A stretch of 64,000 nucleotides of DNA from positions 248,001 through 312,000 of the IMG/VR virus record IMGVR_UViG_3300034073_005389; one strand, 5' to 3'. Below, piece by piece: positions 19,919-60,305 of the stretch. Each line of letters opens with the position of its first letter. Within the stretch, counting starts at the first letter, position 1. The notes under the pieces were generated by a model that ran no database searches, was not told where the DNA came from, and saw only the letters and a program-made list of their open reading frames with translations. Made by a program: the position numbers and the translations under genes.

Positions 19919-20074
19919 ATGAAAAACAAATCTATCTTAATAAGACTTTCAGATGATGAAATGAAAGAAATAAATGATTTATTTAAAAAAGAAATAGTCA
20001 ATAATGATTTAATTAGCAGGAGTGAATTTGTAAGAAGACTAATTAAATTGGGCATGGTGCAATATGAAAAATAA
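19919..20074 (+). CDS. Ribbon-helix-helix (CopG-like) DNA-binding protein
   Basis: KSILIRLSDDEMKEI...SRSEFVRRLI pattern; coupled to the downstream endonuclease. Confidence 0.6.
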   Translation: MKNKSILIRLSDDEMKEINDLFKKEIVNNDLISRSEFVRRLIKLGMVQYEK

Positions 20075-21554
20075 ATATGACACTAATTCCTTCATAAGGG
20101 TTGCGGCTGAAATTCATAAAAATAAATATGATTATTCTAAATCAGAATATACTACTATTTCTAATAAAATCACTATTATTTGCCCTAATCATGGAGAATT
20201 TAAACAAGAGGCAAAGTACCATTTAAAGGGTGGTGGATGCTATCAGTGCGCTAAAGAGTCTCGTAAAACCCCAAAAACAAGTATTGAAACTTTCATTGAA
20301 AAAGCAAGAAAAATATTTGGTAATAATTATTGTTATGATGAAGTTAATTATATTAATACTCTTACTAAAGTAAAAATAATTTGTAAAGAACACGGCTCTT
20401 TTGAACAAAAGCCAGTAAGTCATCTATCTGGAAGTGGATGCAGACTATGTTTTCATAACAGAAAAACATCGTCTAACGATCAATTCATAGATAAAGCAAT
20501 CAAAATTCATGGAAATAAATATAGTTATTTGCTATCTGAATATAAAAACAATAAATCAAATATAAAGATATTATGCCCTATTCATGGAGAGTTTGTACAA
20601 CAAGCCGCAGCTCATTTAAGAGGAGCTAATTGTCCAAGTTGCTCAAGGAAAACAGAAAAAATAGCAGGAGAATTTTTTAATAAAGTTAATCAGCTATATA
20701 AAAATAAATATGATTACTCATTATCAAAATATAAAAATAATAGGGAAAAAATAATTATTATTTGCCCAATTCATGGACAATTTACTCGTCAACCATGTAA
20801 ACATCTGGTAGGATACGGATGTTCCAGGTGTGGAAAATATGCAAAATTATCAAATAATTATTTTATTGAAAGAGCAGTTGAGCTACATGGCGATAAGTAT
20901 GATTACTCAAATATTAATATTACTAGTAATAAATCAATTGCGAGAATTATTTGCAAAATTCATGGCGAATTTAATCAGGAAGCAGGAAGCCACTTAAAAG
21001 GCAGCGGCTGTTCTGGATGTAGTGGTACTAAAAAATTAGACACCAATATTTTCATTAAAAGATCTAAAAAGATTCATGGAGATAAATATGATTATTCTTT
21101 ATCTAAATATGTTGGAATCAATAAAAAAGTTAAAATTATTTGTAAAGAACATGGAGAATTTTTACAAATAGCAAATAATCATATGCTTGGTGGAGGGTGT
21201 CCTAAATGTGGAGTAAGCTGCTCTAAAGATGAAATATCATGGATTAAATCATTTAATAATTTAAATATTATTTCTGGATACGACAAATTAATTATTAATA
21301 ATAAAAAATTAAAACCTGACGGATTTGATCCAACCACCAACACTGTTTATGAGTTTTATGGAGATTATTGGCATGGTAATCCAAAAAAATTTAAATCAGA
21401 AGATATCAACCCTTCTAATAATATTAGTTTTGGAGAACTTTATAAAAAAACTATAAAAAGAGCTAATATGATAAAAATGGCTGGTTACAATCTTGTTTCA
21501 ATTTGGGAATACGATTATAGAAAATCTCTATGTAAAACCAAAGATATTAAATAA
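20064..21554 (+). CDS. Free-standing endonuclease: six DUF723-like zinc repeats plus an EDxHD/Vsr-like nuclease domain
   Basis: Six KYDYS...IICxxHGxF...HLxGxGCxxC repeats; C-terminal PDGFD...VYEFYGDYWHG. Confidence 0.85.
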   Translation: MKNKYDTNSFIRVAAEIHKNKYDYSKSEYTTISNKITIICPNHGEFKQEAKYHLKGGGCYQCAKESRKTPKTSIETFIEKARKIFGNNYCYDEVNYINTLTKVKIICKEHGSFEQKPVSHLSGSGCRLCFHNRKTSSNDQFIDKAIKIHGNKYSYLLSEYKNNKSNIKILCPIHGEFVQQAAAHLRGANCPSCSRKTEKIAGEFFNKVNQLYKNKYDYSLSKYKNNREKIIIICPIHGQFTRQPCKHLVGYGCSRCGKYAKLSNNYFIERAVELHGDKYDYSNINITSNKSIARIICKIHGEFNQEAGSHLKGSGCSGCSGTKKLDTNIFIKRSKKIHGDKYDYSLSKYVGINKKVKIICKEHGEFLQIANNHMLGGGCPKCGVSCSKDEISWIKSFNNLNIISGYDKLIINNKKLKPDGFDPTTNTVYEFYGDYWHGNPKKFKSEDINPSNNISFGELYKKTIKRANMIKMAGYNLVSIWEYDYRKSLCKTKDIK

Positions 21555-46099: not shown

Positions 46100-47650
46100 T
46101 TATTGAATTGACTTCATTGTCGGAAATAGAATTACATCTCTAATAGAAGCTGCATTAGTAAGCAACATAAACAATCGATCTAGTCCAATTCCAAATCCAA
46201 TGGCAGGTGGCATACCATACTGCAAAGCAGTTACATAGTCAGCATCAAAATCCATTGCATCCTTACTGTTATCTGCAAGCTGTTCCTTAAACCGGAGTTC
46301 TTGTTCCGTTGGATCATTCAACTCCTGAAAAGCATTGCACAATTCACGACCATCTACGAATAATTCAAATCGATCACAGAAAGATGAGTTACTATCCTTA
46401 GATCTTGCCAAAGGACAAATATCCTTTGGATAGTCAGTAATAAATACAGGAACAGAATACTTGTTATCCGAGGTACGATAATCCTGAGTTAAAAAAGGCT
46501 CAGCCATATATTCAAAGAAAGTACAAATAACTTGACCCATAGACTTAGCCTTAGTTACTTCTGACCACATCTCTTCCATATCAATCTTCCGATTTACATG
46601 ATGAGACAACTGCTCATAACTAACTCCAGACTTAGTAATATGAAGCTTTACCCCTAGCTTTTCAGCGGCATTATGCACCGCTTGAAGCATAGTAACCTGT
46701 ACTGGATTACTAAATGTAAATGTTCTATTTTCCTTCCACGCAAGATAAATTGGAAGAATGTTCTTTGGTAGATGCTTTTCTAAATACATTTCCACATGCG
46801 CAAACATGCTAGTAGTTCTTTCGATTAGCTTTGGAAAATTACCATAAGCCTCGTAGAACTCCATCATAGTAAACTCTGGATTATGTCGAGTAGATAATCC
46901 TTCATTTCTATAATTTCTACCAATCTCAAAAACCTTATCCATACCGCCTACCAGTAAACGCTTTAGATAAAGTTCTGGAGCAATACGCAGAAACAAATCC
47001 ATATCCAAGGCATTATGATGAGTAGTAAAAGGCTTTGCGTTAGCTCCGCTACTAACAGTATTAAGAGTGCTGGTTTCTACTTCTAAAAAACCTTCACGCT
47101 CCATGTAATCGCGGATTCCACGCAAAGCATAACTACGCACTACGAAAACTGCACGACTTTCTTCTGAAGAAAGAAGATCAAGATATCGTTGGCGATACTT
47201 AGTTTCGGTATCAGAAATACCAGCAAACTTTTCTGGCATTGGTCGGTGAGACTTAGTAAGTAGTCTCCAATTTAGAAGCAAAAGACTTTTTTCGCTAGTC
47301 TTACTGAGACAAAGCTTGCCTTCTACTTCGATAATATCACCAAGATCCATAAGGCGAATATTTTGGAAATCAGAACAAGCAGCCTTACTGATAATAAGCT
47401 GAATAGAGCCGGTACTATCATACATTGTTACAAATGCAATCGAACCTCCCTTTCTAAAAGTTTGGATACGACCACGAGTAACAACCGACTCTCCTAAATC
47501 ATCTGGATTAATAGAAATAGGAGTATTATCACTAAACTGACAAAGCAACGTTCCGATTTCAACTCCAGTGGAGTTAGCAAGTGGATAAGTTCCGCTATTT
47601 ACTTCTTCATGCTTAGAGATACGGGTACGAATTAAATCTTGTTCAGACAT
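46100..47650 (-). CDS. lysS: Lysyl-tRNA synthetase, class II
   Basis: OB anticodon domain, YRQRYLDL, LRIAPELYLKRL, FRN-type motif 2 (YRNEG...HNPEFTM) and motif 3 GFGIGLDRL. Confidence 0.96.
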   Translation of the reverse strand: MSEQDLIRTRISKHEEVNSGTYPLANSTGVEIGTLLCQFSDNTPISINPDDLGESVVTRGRIQTFRKGGSIAFVTMYDSTGSIQLIISKAACSDFQNIRLMDLGDIIEVEGKLCLSKTSEKSLLLLNWRLLTKSHRPMPEKFAGISDTETKYRQRYLDLLSSEESRAVFVVRSYALRGIRDYMEREGFLEVETSTLNTVSSGANAKPFTTHHNALDMDLFLRIAPELYLKRLLVGGMDKVFEIGRNYRNEGLSTRHNPEFTMMEFYEAYGNFPKLIERTTSMFAHVEMYLEKHLPKNILPIYLAWKENRTFTFSNPVQVTMLQAVHNAAEKLGVKLHITKSGVSYEQLSHHVNRKIDMEEMWSEVTKAKSMGQVICTFFEYMAEPFLTQDYRTSDNKYSVPVFITDYPKDICPLARSKDSNSSFCDRFELFVDGRELCNAFQELNDPTEQELRFKEQLADNSKDAMDFDADYVTALQYGMPPAIGFGIGLDRLFMLLTNAASIRDVILFPTMKSIQ

Positions 47651-47656
47651 ATTTCC

Positions 47657-47881
47657 TCAATTAATCATATTCTTATCGTCAGAAGAATCTTCACCACTAA
47701 GAATATCATTTACCGAATTATCAACAGTACGCAGCAAATCCTCAGCAGCATCCATTAAAAGGGTACTTAGACTTAAGCACTCAGCTGAATTAAGAACTCC
47801 AAGAGAAATAGTAACTTCCTCTGTCTCAAGGGAAACTTCAACTTGCTCATCTGCAATTTTATTAATGGTAATATTAATCAT
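47657..47881 (-). CDS. Small acidic hypothetical protein
   Basis: 74 aa within the operon. Confidence 0.55.
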   Translation of the reverse strand: MINITINKIADEQVEVSLETEEVTISLGVLNSAECLSLSTLLMDAAEDLLRTVDNSVNDILSGEDSSDDKNMIN

Positions 47882-47884
47882 AAT

Positions 47885-48283
47885 TTACACCGTGTAAACA
47901 CGGTCCTTATCTTGTTGTGGGAACCAGATTCCGTACTGATTATCGTTAATAGTATAATAAACTTTTTTAACTCGATGTGCTCGAATTTTCAATTGACAAT
48001 CTGGACAAGGACGAGCCATAGCGAGGGAACGATCCTTGCGCAAAACACGAGAAACAAAAATCACACCATCTTTGCCTAGCTTACGAAGCAAACGACTTTC
48101 GGCATGAGAATTAACATTTACATTGGACATTTGCACAGAAGAAGAAAAAGAAACGGCGCCATTTCTAGAAGAAACCATGACGCCATCTTTTCTAATTCCA
48201 ATTGCTCCCAACCAAAAACTGCGAAGATCCGCACTATTAGTGGGAAGTGCTAGTCCCGCCGCCTCCAACAGAAAATCCAGCAT
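47885..48283 (-). CDS. Zn-dependent cytidine-deaminase-fold protein
   Basis: HAE...PCPDC signature. Confidence 0.85.
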   Translation of the reverse strand: MLDFLLEAAGLALPTNSADLRSFWLGAIGIRKDGVMVSSRNGAVSFSSSVQMSNVNVNSHAESRLLRKLGKDGVIFVSRVLRKDRSLAMARPCPDCQLKIRAHRVKKVYYTINDNQYGIWFPQQDKDRVYTV

Positions 48284-48611
48284 CTACGACCTCACAAGTA
48301 CAATTGCACTCAGATAAACACATACCCTTAGCTTCTGAATAAAATCCACCACAACCACAGTCTGATAGTAATGTTGGTTGTTGACCTGTACAAACAAAGC
48401 AATCACTTGAACTTACTGGTGCTGTCGCAGACACAGATGCAGATGGAGCACTATGCGAAACTGCTGGAGCACCATGAGACATTACAGATGATAACTCTGC
48501 GCTAAGATGAGTGCTAGGTTTGTTAGTTCCACCACCTAGATTAGCGTCTTGTGATGTACATGAGATTACAAAAAATGTTAGTGTTGTTAGAAATTTTTTC
48601 ATTTTATTCAC
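48237..48611 (-). CDS. Cys-rich lipoprotein-like protein
   Basis: MKKFLTTLTFFVISC lipobox-like start; CFVC...CGC...C.C.C. Confidence 0.5.
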   Translation of the reverse strand: MNKMKKFLTTLTFFVISCTSQDANLGGGTNKPSTHLSAELSSVMSHGAPAVSHSAPSASVSATAPVSSSDCFVCTGQQPTLLSDCGCGGFYSEAKGMCLSECNCTCEVVDAGFSVGGGGTSTSH

Positions 48612-49209
48612 CTTTAAATTGTTTTAAAATTTGTTTACGAATTACTTTTGGAAACCCTGGATTCAATTCTAAATATTTTGGCAAGATTTCATGCCGAATC
48701 TTATTTCTCATATATTTAGTATCTTGATTACTAGGATCTTCAATCCAAGGAACTTGGTGTCGTAAGCACCAATTTACCATTTCACTTTTAAGATTAAGTA
48801 AAAATGGTCGAATAATCAAACCGTTAATATATGGAATTAATCTAGGCAATCCATGAGCAGAAGTAAAAATCCAATTTTCCATCTGATCATTTAAATTATG
48901 AGCCATCACCATAGGAAGCTGGAATTTCTTAAACCAATTATATCTTTGGTTTCTCCAATATTCTTCCCAAGACTCTTGTTTAGATTTATCGGAACATATT
49001 GTGCCAATTTCTAAATCAATTTTGTGCTGACTACAATAATCTTGAATAAATGTCTGAGCTAAAGCTCCGAACTCAGTACCATGATTAAAGTAACATACTT
49101 TGATTTCTCTTCCACCATTTTTAAGAAAATGTAGTGCCGCCATACTATCAGCACCACCAGAACAAGCCAAAGTAACTTGATATGGAATTTTATTTAGTAA
49201 TCGCAACAT
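48604..49209 (-). CDS. tilS: tRNA(Ile)-lysidine synthase, catalytic domain only
   Basis: ACSGGADSM, FNHG, RNQRY, AHNLNDQME, IIRPFL, WIEDPSN and MRNKIRHEILP. Confidence 0.93.
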   Translation of the reverse strand: MLRLLNKIPYQVTLACSGGADSMAALHFLKNGGREIKVCYFNHGTEFGALAQTFIQDYCSQHKIDLEIGTICSDKSKQESWEEYWRNQRYNWFKKFQLPMVMAHNLNDQMENWIFTSAHGLPRLIPYINGLIIRPFLLNLKSEMVNWCLRHQVPWIEDPSNQDTKYMRNKIRHEILPKYLELNPGFPKVIRKQILKQFKGE

Positions 49210-49216
49210 AATACGA

Positions 49217-50080
49217 ATGCACATATATCTGCATATATGTATGTCTGAAATTAAATGTAAATTTTGCGAAAAAATATTATTATCTAATATGTCTAGATCA
49301 ATACATCAATTAAGATGTAATCTTAATCCAGAATTTGACCCAAACAGATTTACAACACCATCTAGAAGAGGAAAGTATAAGTCAAACTCTCCATCTAAAA
49401 GCACATTAAAAAAACAAGAAAGTAAAACCCGACTAAAAAAACAATTAGATACAAAAAAATTTGTATGCCAATATTGTTGGCATGACATTACGACTTCAAC
49501 AAAACTGCCGCCTAAATTTTATTTTAAAGGCTTAAGGCTACATGAATCTATGTGCGGTAAAAATCCGCATGGGAAATCAGTAATGTATCCAACTAAACAT
49601 TCAGATAAAACTATCGAAAAATTAAAAGAGTCAGGTAAAAAAAGAGTTTGGACTCAGGAACAAAAAATAAAACTTAGTGAAAGTATGAAAAATGCTGTTA
49701 AAAAGCATCCGGAATCATACACAAATTCTAATAGAGGAAGGGTTAAACAAATAATATTTGATAATATCAAATTTCATGGTAAATGGGAAGTTGCTTTCTA
49801 TAAATGGTCAAAAGAAAACAATATTGAGATAAAAAAAAATATTGAAGGATTTAACTATTATTGGAGAGGTAATAGAACATATTTTCCTGATTTTTATCTT
49901 CCAAAATTAGAATTATTTATTGAAATAAAAGGATATGAAACATATCGAGACCAAGCAAAATGGTCTGCATTTCCTAAGAAACTTATAGTAATTAGAAAAG
50001 AACAAATTTTACAAATTAATAAAGGAATATTTCCTGGAATAGAAAGCATTCCTTTAACTAGTCCGACAAACAGGACTTGA
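49217..50080 (+). CDS. Free-standing PD-(D/E)xK endonuclease with zinc fingers and NUMOD3-like segment (start may be 49241)
   Basis: KWEVAF...YFPDFYL...FIEIKG; CxxC...HxxxC fingers; KHSDKTIEKL. Confidence 0.8.
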   Translation: MHIYLHICMSEIKCKFCEKILLSNMSRSIHQLRCNLNPEFDPNRFTTPSRRGKYKSNSPSKSTLKKQESKTRLKKQLDTKKFVCQYCWHDITTSTKLPPKFYFKGLRLHESMCGKNPHGKSVMYPTKHSDKTIEKLKESGKKRVWTQEQKIKLSESMKNAVKKHPESYTNSNRGRVKQIIFDNIKFHGKWEVAFYKWSKENNIEIKKNIEGFNYYWRGNRTYFPDFYLPKLELFIEIKGYETYRDQAKWSAFPKKLIVIRKEQILQINKGIFPGIESIPLTSPTNRT

Positions 50081-50373
50081 ACCTGTAACCACGCGATTAT
50101 GCTTACCACTACGATTTTCATCGCCTTTTTAAAGTTTGTGGTCTGGACTATACCTTCCCTCTCGGGTCTAACGTCTAGTCTCTACACCTTCTCAAATTTA
50201 TTGAGCTTGGCTCGGGATTAGCATATAAATTTCTTTACTTAGCTTTCCCCGAATTTGTCAGATTCTACCAAGATGTTTCACTTGGCAACCCACGATAGTA
50301 TATCATGAACATATATTGTTTTTAGATATACAATCTTCGAGTCGCATGCTCTAACCAATTGAGCTATTGTCGG
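50062..50373 (-). tRNA. trnI: tRNA-Ile2(CAU), intron-containing (exons 50340-50373 and 50062-50101), CCA not encoded
   Basis: Joined exons give CCGACAA/TTGTCGG, A73 and GCGACT|CATAATCGC, the anticodon arm I recall from E. coli ileX; lacks the initiator features; adjacent to tilS. Confidence 0.88.
50102..50339 (-). mobile_element. Group I intron (IC3-like, 238 nt) between tRNA positions 33 and 34
   Basis: AAAUUCGGGGAA, AAUCCCGAGC, GUGUAGAGACUA and UAUAGUCC; P1 GCGACU/GGUUGC; P3 UCUGAC/GUUAGA; P8 CCC-GAGA-GGG; terminal G. Confidence 0.92.
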
Positions 50374-52755: not shown

Positions 52756-52817
52756 TATATTCTCCTTTTATGTTTGTTATGGTGGGAATATAATATATAA
52801 TTATGAATAGAAAATAG

Positions 52818-52890
52818 CTGAGGAAGAAGGATTCGAACCTTCAACTTACGGATTCAAAGTCCGTCATTCTGCCAATTGAATTATTCCTCA
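52818..52890 (-). tRNA. trnQ: tRNA-Gln(UUG)
   Basis: TGAGGAA/TTCCTCA stem, G73, ACGGA-CTTTGAA-TCCGT arm and GGTTCGAATCC. Confidence 0.93.
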
Positions 52891-58569: not shown

Positions 58570-58591
58570 ATGTTACCTAATAACAATTTAG

Positions 58592-58672
58592 TGGGAAGTG
58601 ATGAATTTGAACCACCGTAGTCTATGACAAAGCGTTTACAGCGCTCCCCCGTTAGCCACTTGGGTAACTTCC
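58592..58672 (-). tRNA. trnY: tRNA-Tyr(GUA)
   Basis: GGGAAGT/ACTTCCC stem, A73, AGCG-CTGTAAA-CGCT arm and long variable arm. Confidence 0.9.
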
Positions 58673-58869
58673 CGAATACAGCATATGCAAGCTGACATAT
58701 GCACTATATCTTTAAGGCATATATAGTTTGCCATTAAATCAATAATAATTCTGAGACCTAAAATTCATATACCGCTCTTGCTTTAAGAATTTAATCTCAT
58801 CTTCTAAAATTTTAATTTTTTTCTCTAGCTCTTCTATTTTAGCTAGTAAAATTTTTACATCTTCCAAAA

Positions 58870-60220: not shown

Positions 60221-60233
60221 AACTTTCCTTTAG

Positions 60234-60305
60234 AGCAGGCGACAAGACTTGAACTTGCAACATTTCGGATGGAAACCGAAGGCTCTGCCATTGAGCTACG
60301 CCTGC
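60234..60305 (-). tRNA. trnG: tRNA-Gly(UCC)
   Basis: GCAGGCG/CGCCTGC stem, U73 and TTCGG-TTTCCAT-CCGAA arm. Confidence 0.92.

What the first reader, a model, noticed from the sequence alone, without database searches (positions are those of the whole stretch)
48604..50373. Splicing-gated AUA decoding unit: intron-split tRNA-Ile2 next to its own TilS
Seen: tRNA-Ile2(CAU) and tilS are co-oriented and adjacent apart from an antisense nuclease. A 238-nt group I intron lies exactly at U33|C34, so the C34 that TilS converts to lysidine has no anticodon loop until splicing. Known: TilS acts on C34 of tRNA-Ile2 to read AUA; the Azoarcus Ile-CAU intron is at 36/37, and 33/34 is known from cyanobacterial fMet. 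I know of no described phage tilS plus intron-tRNA unit. Inference: self-splicing (GTP- and Mg-dependent) could time AUA decoding, and the precursor would be shielded from anticodon nucleases.
Basis: partly seen in the sequence, partly recalled or inferred. Interest (0 to 1): 0.85.

Follow-up and report, generated by a model that had tools for sequence, protein, structure and literature searches.

The report
Intron-split phage tRNA-Ile2 beside minimal TilS
A jumbo phage carries its own kit for reading the AUA codon (a CAU-anticodon tRNA plus a stripped-down lysidine synthetase), and that tRNA gene has been colonised by two separate selfish elements, a self-splicing intron and a homing-endonuclease cassette, so the "splicing gate" is most likely a by-product and not a designed switch.

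Summary
On the minus strand lie a tRNA(CAU) split at U33|C34 by a 238-nt group I intron (50373-50062), a plus-strand nuclease ORF (49241-50080), and a 206-aa TilS (49224-48604).

The tRNA-TilS pairing is well supported. More than 535 viral contigs encode this short, catalytic-domain-only TilS. In 22 of 79 fetched loci a co-oriented tRNA(CAU) lies within 1.5 kb, and in 12 of them within 100 nt.

The gating idea is not supported.
- The intron is sporadic: 2 of those 22 loci.
- It sits at two different sites, 33/34 and 36/37.
- Related introns interrupt Leu, Lys, Thr, Arg and Asn tRNA genes in viral contigs, and the 33/34 type also occurs in bacterial genomes.

The "antisense nuclease" is an 830-bp insertion. 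It is absent from a relative with 83% identical TilS, whose intron-tRNA ends 16 nt before tilS. It belongs to a PD-(D/E)XK family found in 347 viral contigs. In 71 of 80 fetched loci its gene lies within 51 nt of, or overlaps, a tRNA(CAU) gene, which fits a free-standing homing endonuclease.

Worth following up: group I introns in phage tRNA genes, a TilS lacking both C-terminal domains, and a nuclease family tied to tRNA(CAU) genes.

The parts
50340..50373 (-). tRNA(CAU) exon 1: positions 1-33 (acceptor 5' strand, D arm, anticodon-stem 5' strand, C32, U33)
   Evidence: Sequence read. The spliced product folds as a cloverleaf. Aligned with nine homologues.
50102..50339 (-). Group I intron (IC3-like), 238 nt, inserted between U33 and C34. 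No ORF inside it.
   Evidence: Rfam RF00028 at 52.1 bits against a gathering score of 50. The consensus fold of 10 homologues has 69 pairs, 41 of them with compensatory changes. The terminal G is conserved in 10 of 10.
50288..50291 (-). Internal guide sequence GGGU forming P1 with intron +1, U33 (G.U wobble), C32 and A31. Lies immediately 5' of P2.
   Evidence: U33.G in 9 of 10 homologues. Position 31 and guide position 4 covary (A-U eight times, G-C twice).
50062..50101 (-). tRNA(CAU) exon 2: C34-A35-U36, A37, A38, anticodon-stem 3' strand, variable loop, T arm, acceptor 3' strand, A73. No CCA is encoded.
   Evidence: Identical over all 40 nt in relative L406, whose TilS is only 83% identical, which indicates purifying selection.
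49231..50060 (.). 830-bp insertion carrying the nuclease gene, placed exactly after the tRNA 3' end (…GGAC|) and before AGATATAT upstream of tilS
   Evidence: In L406 the same tRNA 3' end is followed by AGATATAT… and the tilS ATG after 16 nt.
49241..50080 (+). Putative free-standing homing endonuclease, 279 aa (the longest ORF starts at 49217). It has N-terminal CxxC…H…C zinc-finger-like motifs and a C-terminal PD-(D/E)XK nuclease domain. Its last 19 nt and stop codon lie antisense inside the tRNA 3' end.
   Evidence: PHROG 15137 at 1e-20. E183, D217, E228 and K230 are invariant in 28 homologues. AlphaFold2 mean pLDDT is 80, and the best Foldseek match is the I-Bth0305I homing endonuclease catalytic domain (probability 0.98, E 0.03). 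71 of 80 homologous loci abut a tRNA(CAU) gene.
48604..49224 (-). Minimal TilS: PP-loop catalytic N-terminal domain only (206 aa as the longest ORF, probably 201 aa starting at 49209). CTD1 and CTD2 are absent.
   Evidence: TIGR02432 at 120.8 bits against a cut-off of 93.6, and PF01171 at 1.4e-33. The profile matches residues 24-228 of A. aeolicus TilS, with the SGGxDS, HHLxDxxET, EDxSN and RNxIR motifs conserved. All close homologues are about 200 aa. The downstream ORF 48237-48611 has no TilS C-domain match.
46100..47650 (-). Context only: full-length class II lysyl-tRNA synthetase, same strand, about 1 kb downstream of tilS. The gene order tilS-orf-deaminase-like-orf-lysS is conserved in L406.
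   Evidence: NF001756 at 507 bits against a cut-off of 468. Synteny shown.

Best explanation
The locus is a phage-borne AUA-decoding module that two independent selfish DNA elements have invaded.

Core module. An AT-rich jumbo phage that uses AUA heavily encodes its own tRNA-Ile2(CAU) and, directly downstream on the same strand, a minimal TilS made of the catalytic PP-loop domain alone. TilS would convert C34 of that tRNA to lysidine, using ATP and lysine, so that the tRNA reads AUA and is charged with Ile. Because the enzyme lacks the C-terminal domains that cellular TilS uses to read the anticodon stem, elbow and acceptor stem, it probably recognises only the anticodon arm. It has probably co-evolved with the adjacent phage tRNA.

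Invader 1. An ORF-less IC3 group I intron sits between U33 and C34. P1 pairs intron +1, U33, C32 and A31 with the guide GGGU. The intron must self-splice, using guanosine and Mg2+, before an anticodon loop exists. Lysidine formation is therefore necessarily post-splicing. I read this as a neutral consequence of intron carriage, not an evolved gate.

Invader 2. An 830-bp cassette encoding a zinc-finger plus PD-(D/E)XK nuclease was inserted exactly at the tRNA 3' end. Members of this family almost always abut tRNA(CAU) genes. The nuclease most likely cuts nuclease-free alleles of that conserved gene in co-infecting phages and is copied in by repair. That would drag the tRNA-tilS region along, as SegB does for the T4 tRNA cluster.

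Shown here: gene identities, splice junction, conserved RNA structure, linkage statistics and the insertion polymorphism. Inferred: splicing activity, lysidine formation, Ile charging, DNA cleavage and homing.
For: Intron and junction.

TilS identity and minimal architecture. [quoted passage not shown]

tRNA-TilS linkage: the family occurs in more than 535 viral contigs. Among 79 non-self loci, 22 have a same-strand tRNA(CAU) within 1.5 kb. In L063, where three CAU tRNAs are present, the one 24 nt from tilS has the E. coli ileX anticodon arm, and the other two look like initiator and elongator Met.

Demand for AUA decoding: AUA is 19.1 per 1000 codons and 26% of Ile codons.

The tRNA is under selection: exon 2 is identical in L406, while TilS is 83% identical.

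The intron is sporadic and mobile:
- it is at 33/34 in the window, L145, L029 and seven others;
- it is at 36/37 in L047 and L015, right next to tilS;
- most tilS-linked tRNA(CAU) genes are intronless;
- 97 of 127 IC3-core hits in viral contigs lie in split tRNA genes of at least six anticodon types;
- the same 33/34 intron is found in Planctomycetota and Accumulibacter genomes.

The nuclease is a mobile insertion: absent in L406, in L145 and in L039 compared with L029.

Nuclease family features: invariant PD-(D/E)XK residues, NUMOD3 in one homologue, and a best fold match to the I-Bth0305I homing endonuclease.

Nuclease-tRNA association: 71 of 80 homologous viral loci have a tRNA(CAU) gene 0-51 nt away, 66 of them intronless.
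Against: No activity was measured for the intron, TilS or the nuclease.

Sequence alone does not separate this tRNA from elongator tRNA-Met. It is 72% identical to both E. coli ileX and metT, and only the anticodon arm (15 of 17 positions) favours ileX.

The Rfam score is only just above threshold.

The Foldseek E-value for the nuclease domain is weak (0.03), and no cleavage site is known.

So tight an association between the nuclease family and tRNA(CAU) genes could also reflect a functional partnership instead of homing.

Recurrent introns at two sites in tilS-linked tRNA(CAU) genes could hint at some benefit of intron carriage that I cannot see.
Confidence: 0.7

Rival explanations
1. The intron is an evolved gate: GTP- and Mg-dependent self-splicing times the appearance of lysidine-modified tRNA-Ile2, and so AUA decoding, and the unspliced precursor is protected from anticodon nucleases.
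For: Anatomy makes splicing obligatory before TilS can act. Intron-bearing tRNA(CAU) genes lie directly next to tilS in at least five independent loci and at two insertion sites: the window, L406 and L145 at 33/34, and L047 and L015 at 36/37.
Against: Only 2 of the 22 tilS-linked tRNA(CAU) genes in the other loci carry an intron.

The same intron group sits in many other tRNA isoacceptors, and its 33/34 form also occurs in bacterial genomes.

No regulatory feature was found in the intron.

A precursor that is shielded is also non-functional, and the mature tRNA would be as exposed as any other. I know of no anticodon nuclease specific for tRNA-Ile2 (from memory, not tested).
Confidence: 0.08
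2. The nuclease is not selfish but a working partner of tRNA(CAU). It could be, for example, a processing, repair or counter-defence enzyme that is co-expressed with the tRNA.
For: The linkage is very tight and usually co-oriented. In most of the 71 loci the gene ends 0-51 nt upstream of the tRNA(CAU) gene. The nuclease domain is conserved, with invariant catalytic residues.
Against: - It is present or absent between close relatives at an otherwise identical junction.
- Its orientation and side vary: antisense and downstream of the tRNA in the window, L010 and L029, sense and upstream elsewhere.
- Its N-terminal DNA-binding modules are variable, including zinc fingers and NUMOD3.
- Its nearest fold is a homing endonuclease.
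- Most tilS + tRNA(CAU) loci lack it.
Confidence: 0.12
3. The CAU tRNA is an elongator tRNA-Met, and the short PP-loop protein does something other than lysidine synthesis, such as another C-modification.
For: Overall identity to E. coli metT equals that to ileX, at 72%. The enzyme lacks the domains that cellular TilS uses to reject tRNA-Met.
Against: TIGR02432, a TilS-specific equivalog domain model, is passed above its cut-off, and TilS-specific motifs are conserved.

Loci with several CAU tRNAs place the ileX-like one next to tilS.

The window tRNA has U12-A23, C29-G41, A37, A38 and A73.

Heavy AUA use gives a clear need.
Confidence: 0.06
4. The split tRNA is a decaying pseudogene, and the intron no longer splices.
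For: The Rfam score is barely above threshold. No CCA is encoded. One family member, L143, has A-U in place of the G.U wobble at the splice site.
Against: All core helices are intact and covary. P1 and the terminal G are intact in the window. Exon 2 and the intron 3' end are identical in a relative whose TilS has diverged by 17%.
Confidence: 0.04

Closest known systems
Bacterial IC3 group I introns in tRNA anticodon loops (Azoarcus tRNA-Ile(CAU), cyanobacterial/plastid tRNA-Leu(UAA), cyanobacterial tRNA-fMet)
   Same: Small ORF-less ribozyme of about 200-250 nt. The core sequences are nearly identical (CAAAUUCGG, CCGAGCCAAGC, GGUGUAGAGACUAGACG, GUAUAGUCC). P1 is built from the anticodon-stem and loop nucleotides with a U.G wobble, and the intron ends in G. 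The anticodon stem pairs across the intron.
   Different: The host gene is in a phage. A 2014 review stated that all phage introns then known were in protein-coding genes (PMC3984707).

The Azoarcus-like introns in L047 and L015 do sit at 36/37.

There is a roughly 45-nt insertion between the 5' splice site and the guide sequence.

TilS (tRNA-Ile lysidine synthetase), type I (NTD+CTD1+CTD2) and type II (NTD+CTD1)
   Same: PP-loop N-terminal catalytic domain with the SGGxDS, HHLxDxxET, EDxSN and RNxIR motifs. It passes TIGR02432 above the cut-off. The best solved relatives are 1wy5, 1ni5 and 3a2k.
   Different: It is only about 200 aa and both C-terminal tRNA-recognition domains are missing. 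Recent TilS literature says every TilS has at least one appended domain (PMC11947777).

The family is large: 188 clusters at 50% identity score E<=1e-30, and more than 535 viral contigs encode it.

It often lies a few tens of nucleotides from its presumed substrate gene.
Phage TilS of Pseudomonas jumbo phages MIJ3 / PA5oct
   Same: Same short family, at 43% identity over 96% of the query and about 200 aa. It is annotated tRNA(Ile)-lysidine synthetase (PMC6892783).
   Different: In PA5oct no tRNA gene is annotated within 3 kb of tilS. No link to a tRNA, an intron or an endonuclease was described there.
Free-standing homing endonucleases next to conserved phage genes (T4 SegB in the tRNA cluster; F-CphI beside the cyanophage psbA intron site; mobE/I-TevIII trans-homing)
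   Same: An intergenic nuclease cassette inserted beside a conserved gene, present or absent among close relatives. In the window it neighbours an ORF-less group I intron, the arrangement described as collaborative or trans homing (PMC2790892, listed; SegB: PMC13096335, listed; both seen as title and abstract only, and the remaining detail is from memory).
   Different: The catalytic domain is PD-(D/E)XK with zinc-finger-like N-terminal modules, not the GIY-YIG of SegB or the HNH of mobE. The target is unknown. 66 of the 71 tRNA(CAU) genes beside such a nuclease are intronless, so the intron is not needed for self-immunity.
PD-(D/E)XK homing endonucleases I-Bth0305I (Vsr-like) and I-Ssp6803I (encoded in the Synechocystis tRNA-fMet intron)
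   Same: Restriction-endonuclease fold used for homing. I-Bth0305I is the top structural match. I-Ssp6803I likewise targets the anticodon region of a CAU-anticodon tRNA gene (PMC1995217).
   Different: There is no detectable sequence similarity to either and no Pfam PF11645 hit. This one is free-standing, not intron-encoded, and carries extra DNA-binding modules.

Membership tests
Group I intron (Rfam RF00028; IC3-like tRNA introns) | Covariance-model score at or above the curated gathering score | tested here: met
   52.1 bits against 50, E 2.3e-10. This is only marginally above threshold.
Group I intron (Rfam RF00028; IC3-like tRNA introns) | 5' splice site after a U that forms a U.G wobble with the internal guide in P1, and a terminal intron G before the 3' exon | tested here: met
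   U33.G50290 and G50102. U.G in 9 of 10 and terminal G in 10 of 10 homologues. Position 31 and guide position 4 show a compensatory change.
Group I intron (Rfam RF00028; IC3-like tRNA introns) | Conserved P2-P9 core helices maintained by covariation | tested here: met
   RNAalifold on 10 pre-tRNAs gives 69 pairs, 41 of them with changes on both sides that keep the pair.
Group I intron (Rfam RF00028; IC3-like tRNA introns) | Guanosine-dependent self-splicing | not testable with these tools
   Needs in vitro transcription and a splicing assay, or RNA-seq.
tRNA-Ile2 (CAU anticodon, lysidine at position 34) | Canonical elongator cloverleaf with a CAU anticodon and no initiator features (1:72 mismatch, three G-C pairs at the bottom of the anticodon stem) | tested here: met
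   The spliced 74-mer folds canonically. C1-G72 is paired, and the anticodon stem is UGCGA/UCGCG.
tRNA-Ile2 (CAU anticodon, lysidine at position 34) | Sequence discrimination from elongator tRNA-Met | tested here: inconclusive
   72% identity to both E. coli ileX and metT. The anticodon arm matches ileX at 15 of 17 positions and differs from metT. The isotype-specific models of tRNAscan-SE 2.0 were not available.
tRNA-Ile2 (CAU anticodon, lysidine at position 34) | Genetic association with TilS | tested here: met
   Same strand and adjacent in the window. The gap is 16 nt in L406. 22 of 79 other tilS loci have a same-strand tRNA(CAU) within 1.5 kb.
tRNA-Ile2 (CAU anticodon, lysidine at position 34) | k2C34 present; charged by IleRS; reads AUA | not testable with these tools
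   Needs mass spectrometry and aminoacylation assays.
TilS | PP-loop ATP-pyrophosphatase N-terminal domain with TilS-specific motifs (TIGR02432) | tested here: met
   120.8 bits against a cut-off of 93.6. SGGADS is present, and H109, D113, E116, R139-P140, D163, N166 and R173-N174 are invariant in the family. Aligned to residues 24-228 of 1wy5.
TilS | At least one C-terminal tRNA-binding domain (CTD1; type I also has CTD2) | tested here: not met
   The protein ends after the N-terminal domain. There is no PF09179 or PF11734 hit in it or in the next ORF. The full-length model NF007942 scores 67.6 against 606. Homologues are about 200 aa and are often followed at once by a tRNA gene. It is therefore a member of the catalytic-domain family but not of either described architecture.
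Free-standing homing endonuclease | Nuclease catalytic domain with intact active-site residues, plus DNA-binding modules | tested here: met
   The E…PD…ExK residues are invariant. Zinc-finger-like motifs are present, and one homologue has NUMOD3. The fold is nearest to I-Bth0305I.
Free-standing homing endonuclease | Presence/absence polymorphism at a fixed site between closely related genomes | tested here: met
   Window against L406: an 830-bp insertion at the tRNA 3' end. L029 against L039. L145 lacks it.
Free-standing homing endonuclease | Consistent association with one conserved target gene | tested here: met
   71 of 80 homologous viral loci have a tRNA(CAU) gene within 51 nt.
Free-standing homing endonuclease | Site-specific cleavage of the endonuclease-free allele and gene conversion | not testable with these tools
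   Needs cleavage assays and mixed-infection crosses.

The most novel reading that the evidence does not exclude
The three parts form a co-inherited drive cassette around an orthogonal decoding system. The domain-less TilS modifies only the phage's own co-evolved tRNA(CAU), which makes AUA decoding independent of the host's TilS specificity. The tRNA(CAU)-specific PD-(D/E)XK nuclease family spreads this module between co-infecting phages. The anticodon-loop introns, at 33/34 or 36/37, persist because they interrupt the recognition site of such nucleases, giving immunity through collaborative homing. Under this reading the intron has a selective role, but in DNA-level conflict and not in timing translation.
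Probability: 0.2. Interest if true: 0.7.

Novelty: new variant of a known kind. Interest (0 to 1): 0.55.

Why it matters
Three points go beyond this one locus.

(1) Group I introns in phage tRNA genes appear to be common in viral metagenome contigs. Ninety-seven split tRNA genes turned up among the first 120 loci carrying one 17-nt core motif, and one is in the cultured Agrobacterium phage Atu_ph07. A standard review said none were known. These are missed because tRNA finders do not model them, so phage tRNA repertoires are under-counted.

(2) A large family of TilS enzymes made of the catalytic domain alone, often encoded next to the presumed substrate tRNA, is a natural experiment on an open question. 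That question is how TilS tells tRNA-Ile2 from tRNA-Met without reading the acceptor stem. The family is small enough to be tractable for structural work.

(3) A nuclease family that sits beside tRNA(CAU) genes in about 90% of fetched cases would, if it is a homing enzyme, be a new tRNA-gene-specific endonuclease family. It would also be a possible driver of horizontal spread of decoding modules among phages.

The specific "splicing-gated decoding" idea is not needed to explain the locus.

Tried and rejected
- ARAGORN without intron mode misses the gene. With intron mode it reports tRNA-Leu(caa) with a 220-nt intron. I rejected that call because it violates the rule of a U before the 5' splice site and a G ending the intron, and because it disagrees with the homologues.
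- My first automatic splice-site solver, which ran ARAGORN on all candidate junctions, was hopelessly ambiguous. I replaced it with a strict stem-loop rule. That rule still mis-called the L029 type as UGA because of a G27-A43 mismatch, and I corrected this by hand.
- Megablast of the region against GenBank phages found nothing.
- A sequence search of the nuclease against the PDB gave only chance zinc-finger matches.
- Whole-tRNA identity to E. coli ileX, metT and metZ does not discriminate Ile2 from Met for the window tRNA.
- A splice site at 34/35, with the shared C assigned to exon 1, would give the same product. I rejected it because it would put C, not U, before the 5' splice site and C, not G, at the intron end. 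The intron 3' end GUGGUAAG also aligns with that of the tRNA-Leu introns.
- Promoter and terminator scans around the locus were uninformative.
- The 15-mer scan of bacterial genomes returned mostly chance matches. Only 5 of 120 carried a group I core.
- Comparing exon and intron divergence, about 70% each, did not separate vertical from lateral intron inheritance.
- I could not retrieve the papers giving the cyanobacterial fMet intron position.
- Whether ORF 48237-48611 supplies a missing TilS C-terminal domain: there is no family hit, and it is not conserved next to tilS in other loci.


Full report
SOURCE AND CONTEXT. The window is part of IMGVR_UViG_3300034073_005389, a 361-kb viral contig. 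It has about 32% G+C, mostly minus-strand genes, and PHROG matches typical of large phages. No close relative exists among GenBank phages.

OBSERVATION. Rfam finds one group I intron, at 50314-50120 (-), with 52.1 bits against a gathering score of 50. Reading the minus strand gives three pieces:
- exon 1 at 50373-50340, ending GCGACU;
- a 238-nt intervening sequence at 50339-50102, ending GUGGUAAG;
- exon 2 at 50101-50062, starting CAUAAUCGCG.

The joined exons form a textbook 74-nt cloverleaf with anticodon CAU, C1-G72, discriminator A73 and no encoded CCA. ARAGORN alone misses the gene, and its intron mode mis-assigns it.

The 206-aa ORF at 49224-48604 (-) passes the TilS N-terminal equivalog-domain model: TIGR02432 at 120.8 bits against 93.6. 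Its family profile aligns to the catalytic domains of the three solved TilS structures.

The plus-strand ORF between the tRNA and tilS matches a PHROG 'endonuclease' family.

THE SPLICE JUNCTION. Nine further viral pre-tRNA(CAU) genes carry a homologous intron at the same place. In this set:
- the nucleotide before the intron is always U33;
- U33 faces a G of the guide sequence GGGU that lies just 5' of P2 in 9 of 10 sequences;
- position 31 covaries with guide position 4 (A-U eight times, G-C twice);
- the intron always ends in G, and exon 2 always starts CAU.

A consensus fold recovers the tRNA stems, including the anticodon stem paired across the intron, and the intron helices. Forty-one of 69 pairs show compensatory change. 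The intron is therefore a structured RNA under selection, and 33/34 is the junction.

Its 3' half (…GGUAUAGUCCAGACCACAAAC…GUGGUAAG) resembles the tRNA-Leu(UAA) introns found in the same collection. The introns in L047 and L015 are Azoarcus-like and sit at 36/37.

THE tRNA-TilS PAIR. The short TilS is not an oddity.
- The 5.8-billion-protein search returned 221 relatives, and the 120 listed are almost all 197-231 aa.
- The exhaustive search found 188 clusters at 50% identity with E<=1e-30, almost all 180-230 aa.
- More than 535 IMG/VR contigs encode one.
- Cultured carriers are the PA5oct/MIJ3 Pseudomonas jumbo phages, where phage TilS was first reported (PMC6892783).

Pfam and NCBIfam find no TilS C-terminal domain in the protein or in the next ORF. 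[quoted passage not shown] This family is therefore a third, minimal architecture.

In 79 fetched non-self tilS loci, 22 have a tRNA(CAU) within 1.5 kb, always on the tilS strand. Ten intronless ones lie 14-89 nt away, and two intron-bearing ones lie 74 nt away. Where several CAU tRNAs occur (L063), the one 24 nt from tilS carries the anticodon arm of E. coli ileX. The other two resemble initiator and elongator tRNA-Met.

The window tRNA is not an initiator. Its anticodon arm matches ileX at 15 of 17 positions, but overall identity does not separate ileX from metT. The Ile2 assignment therefore rests mainly on linkage.

AUA is used at 19.1 per 1000 codons and makes up 26% of Ile codons in 61 window ORFs. 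This gives the module an obvious job.

IS THE INTRON A GATE? The anatomy does make splicing a precondition for TilS. P1 engages positions 31-33, and C34 is the first exon-2 nucleotide. The distribution, however, argues against an evolved gate.
- Only L015 and L047 among the 22 tilS-linked tRNA(CAU) genes have an intron, and theirs is at 36/37.
- The 33/34 intron also occurs in tRNA(CAU) genes 7 kb from tilS (L029, L039).
- It also occurs in Planctomycetota and Accumulibacter genome assemblies.
- A 17-nt IC3 core motif hits at least 120 viral loci (capped). Of 127 hits, 97 lie inside split tRNA genes: mostly Leu(UAA) at 34/35, but also CAU at both sites, Lys(UUU and CUU), Thr(UGU), Arg(UCU) and Asn(GUU).
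- The cultured Agrobacterium phage Atu_ph07 has an unannotated intron-containing tRNA-Leu(UAA) gene.

This is how a mobile, phenotypically near-neutral ribozyme behaves. It also contradicts the 2014 statement that all phage introns lie in protein-coding genes (PMC3984707). I found no later paper describing phage tRNA introns.

THE NUCLEASE. The closest informative relative is L406, with 83% identical TilS and the same downstream gene order through lysS. Its contig begins inside the intron 3' end. Its exon 2 is identical to the window's over all 40 nt, and its tilS ATG follows 16 nt after the tRNA.

The window has 830 extra base pairs (49231-50060) exactly at that point, and they carry the nuclease gene. 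The ORF simply runs on into the antisense tRNA until it meets a stop codon. L145 is another nuclease-free intron-tRNA/tilS pair, with a 147-nt spacer. L029 has the nuclease where the 88%-identical L039 does not.

The protein family has these features:
- 63 relatives in the word-indexed protein search, and 347 viral contigs;
- variable N-termini with one or two CxxC…H…C motifs, and NUMOD3 in one member;
- a conserved C-terminal domain with invariant E183, D217, E228 and K230, the PD-(D/E)XK signature.

The AlphaFold2 model has a mean pLDDT of 80, rising to between 92 and 97 across most of the nuclease domain. Its best solved match is the catalytic domain of the homing endonuclease I-Bth0305I (probability 0.98, though E is only 0.03). 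Most of the other listed matches are nucleases.

Most telling, in 80 fetched homologous loci the gene lies 0-51 nt from a tRNA(CAU) gene in 71 cases: 66 intronless and 5 split. It is usually just upstream on the same strand, and sometimes antisense at the 3' end, as here. I read this as a free-standing homing endonuclease family whose target is the conserved tRNA(CAU) gene. It is analogous to SegB in the T4 tRNA cluster and to the free-standing enzymes that sit beside intron sites. A functional partnership with the tRNA cannot be excluded.

Because most nuclease-adjacent tRNA genes are intronless, the intron is not required for self-immunity. Whether it confers immunity here is open.

VERDICT. 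The functional pairing of tRNA(CAU) with TilS is well supported. The gating and shielding mechanism is not supported and is not needed. The best model is an AUA-decoding module that carries two selfish passengers.

The novelty lies in three variants of known things: group I introns in phage tRNA genes, a TilS without C-terminal domains, and a nuclease family linked to tRNA(CAU) genes. No function was measured, and all activities are inferred.

Noticed in passing
window 46100-47650 (-), with 47657-47881, 47885-48283 and 48237-48611: A full-length class II lysyl-tRNA synthetase (NF001756, 507 bits) lies about 1 kb downstream of tilS on the same strand. The order tilS-orf-deaminase-like-orf-lysS is conserved in relative L406. 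Both TilS and LysRS use lysine and ATP. Whether the proximity means anything beyond a translation-gene cluster is unknown.
   Followed up: partly
window 47885-48283 (-): A small cytidine/dCMP-deaminase-like ORF, matching only below threshold (Pfam PF00383 E 1.8e-4; PHROG 174 E 3.8e-7). tblastn finds homologues elsewhere in other fetched tilS loci (L014, L024, L044, L049, L055). It could be a nucleotide-metabolism enzyme or a tRNA-editing deaminase.
   Followed up: partly
viral loci L088-L205; for example L015:7072-7363, L021:9320-9611, L134, L154, L168, L188: IC3-type group I introns interrupt many tRNA genes in IMG/VR contigs: Leu(UAA) at 34/35 (46 or more), CAU at 33/34 and 36/37, Lys(UUU) and Lys(CUU), Thr(UGU), Arg(UCU) and Asn(GUU). 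Some of the short contigs may be host fragments and not phage.
   Followed up: partly
L084:1417-1735 (Agrobacterium phage Atu_ph07, MF403008, about 112.9-113.3 kb): The cultured 490-kb jumbo phage has an unannotated gap containing a tRNA-Leu(UAA) gene split by a group I intron (…GGACUU|AUGGAUUAAAAUUUGAGUGC…GUGGUAUG|AAAAUCCG…).
   Followed up: partly
L408:1413-2433: In a relative with 60% identical TilS, the slot between an intronless tRNA(CAU) and tilS is filled by a different antisense 305-aa ORF with no Pfam or PHROG match. The same slot seems to attract different cassettes.
   Followed up: partly
L295, L346, L348, L336, L401 (bacterial genome assemblies): Planctomycetia, Pirellulaceae, Pirellulales and Accumulibacter assemblies carry tRNA(CAU) genes with a homologous intron at 33/34. 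The Accumulibacter tRNA exons are identical to those of the 'viral' contig L143, so L143 may be a prophage or a host fragment.
   Followed up: partly
L143:1487-1814: This family member has A in place of G opposite U33 in P1, giving a U-A pair instead of the U.G wobble at the 5' splice site. That is unusual for group I introns and may impair splicing.
   Followed up: no
window 20064-21554 (+): A 496-aa ORF on the opposite strand to its neighbours, in a local dip in G+C with reversed GC skew. It matches PHROG endonuclease and HNH-endonuclease families with repeated modules (E 6e-82), and is probably another homing endonuclease.
   Followed up: no
window 58591-58673 (-): ARAGORN calls an 83-nt tRNA-Tyr(GUA) that the Rfam tRNA model does not report, even at E<=1. 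Other tRNAs nearby are Gln(UUG) at 52817-52890 and Gly(UCC) at 60233-60305.
   Followed up: no
L407:2499-3581: A relative with 63% identical TilS encodes a peptide-chain release factor homologue (PCRF/RF-1 domains) about 1 kb downstream of tilS. No tRNA was detected in the 312-nt gap upstream of tilS.
   Followed up: no
L010:7205-7288, L011, L017, L014, L027: Several tilS-linked tRNA(CAU) genes are 83-86 nt long with an extended variable arm, an unusual shape for a tRNA with a CAU anticodon.
   Followed up: no
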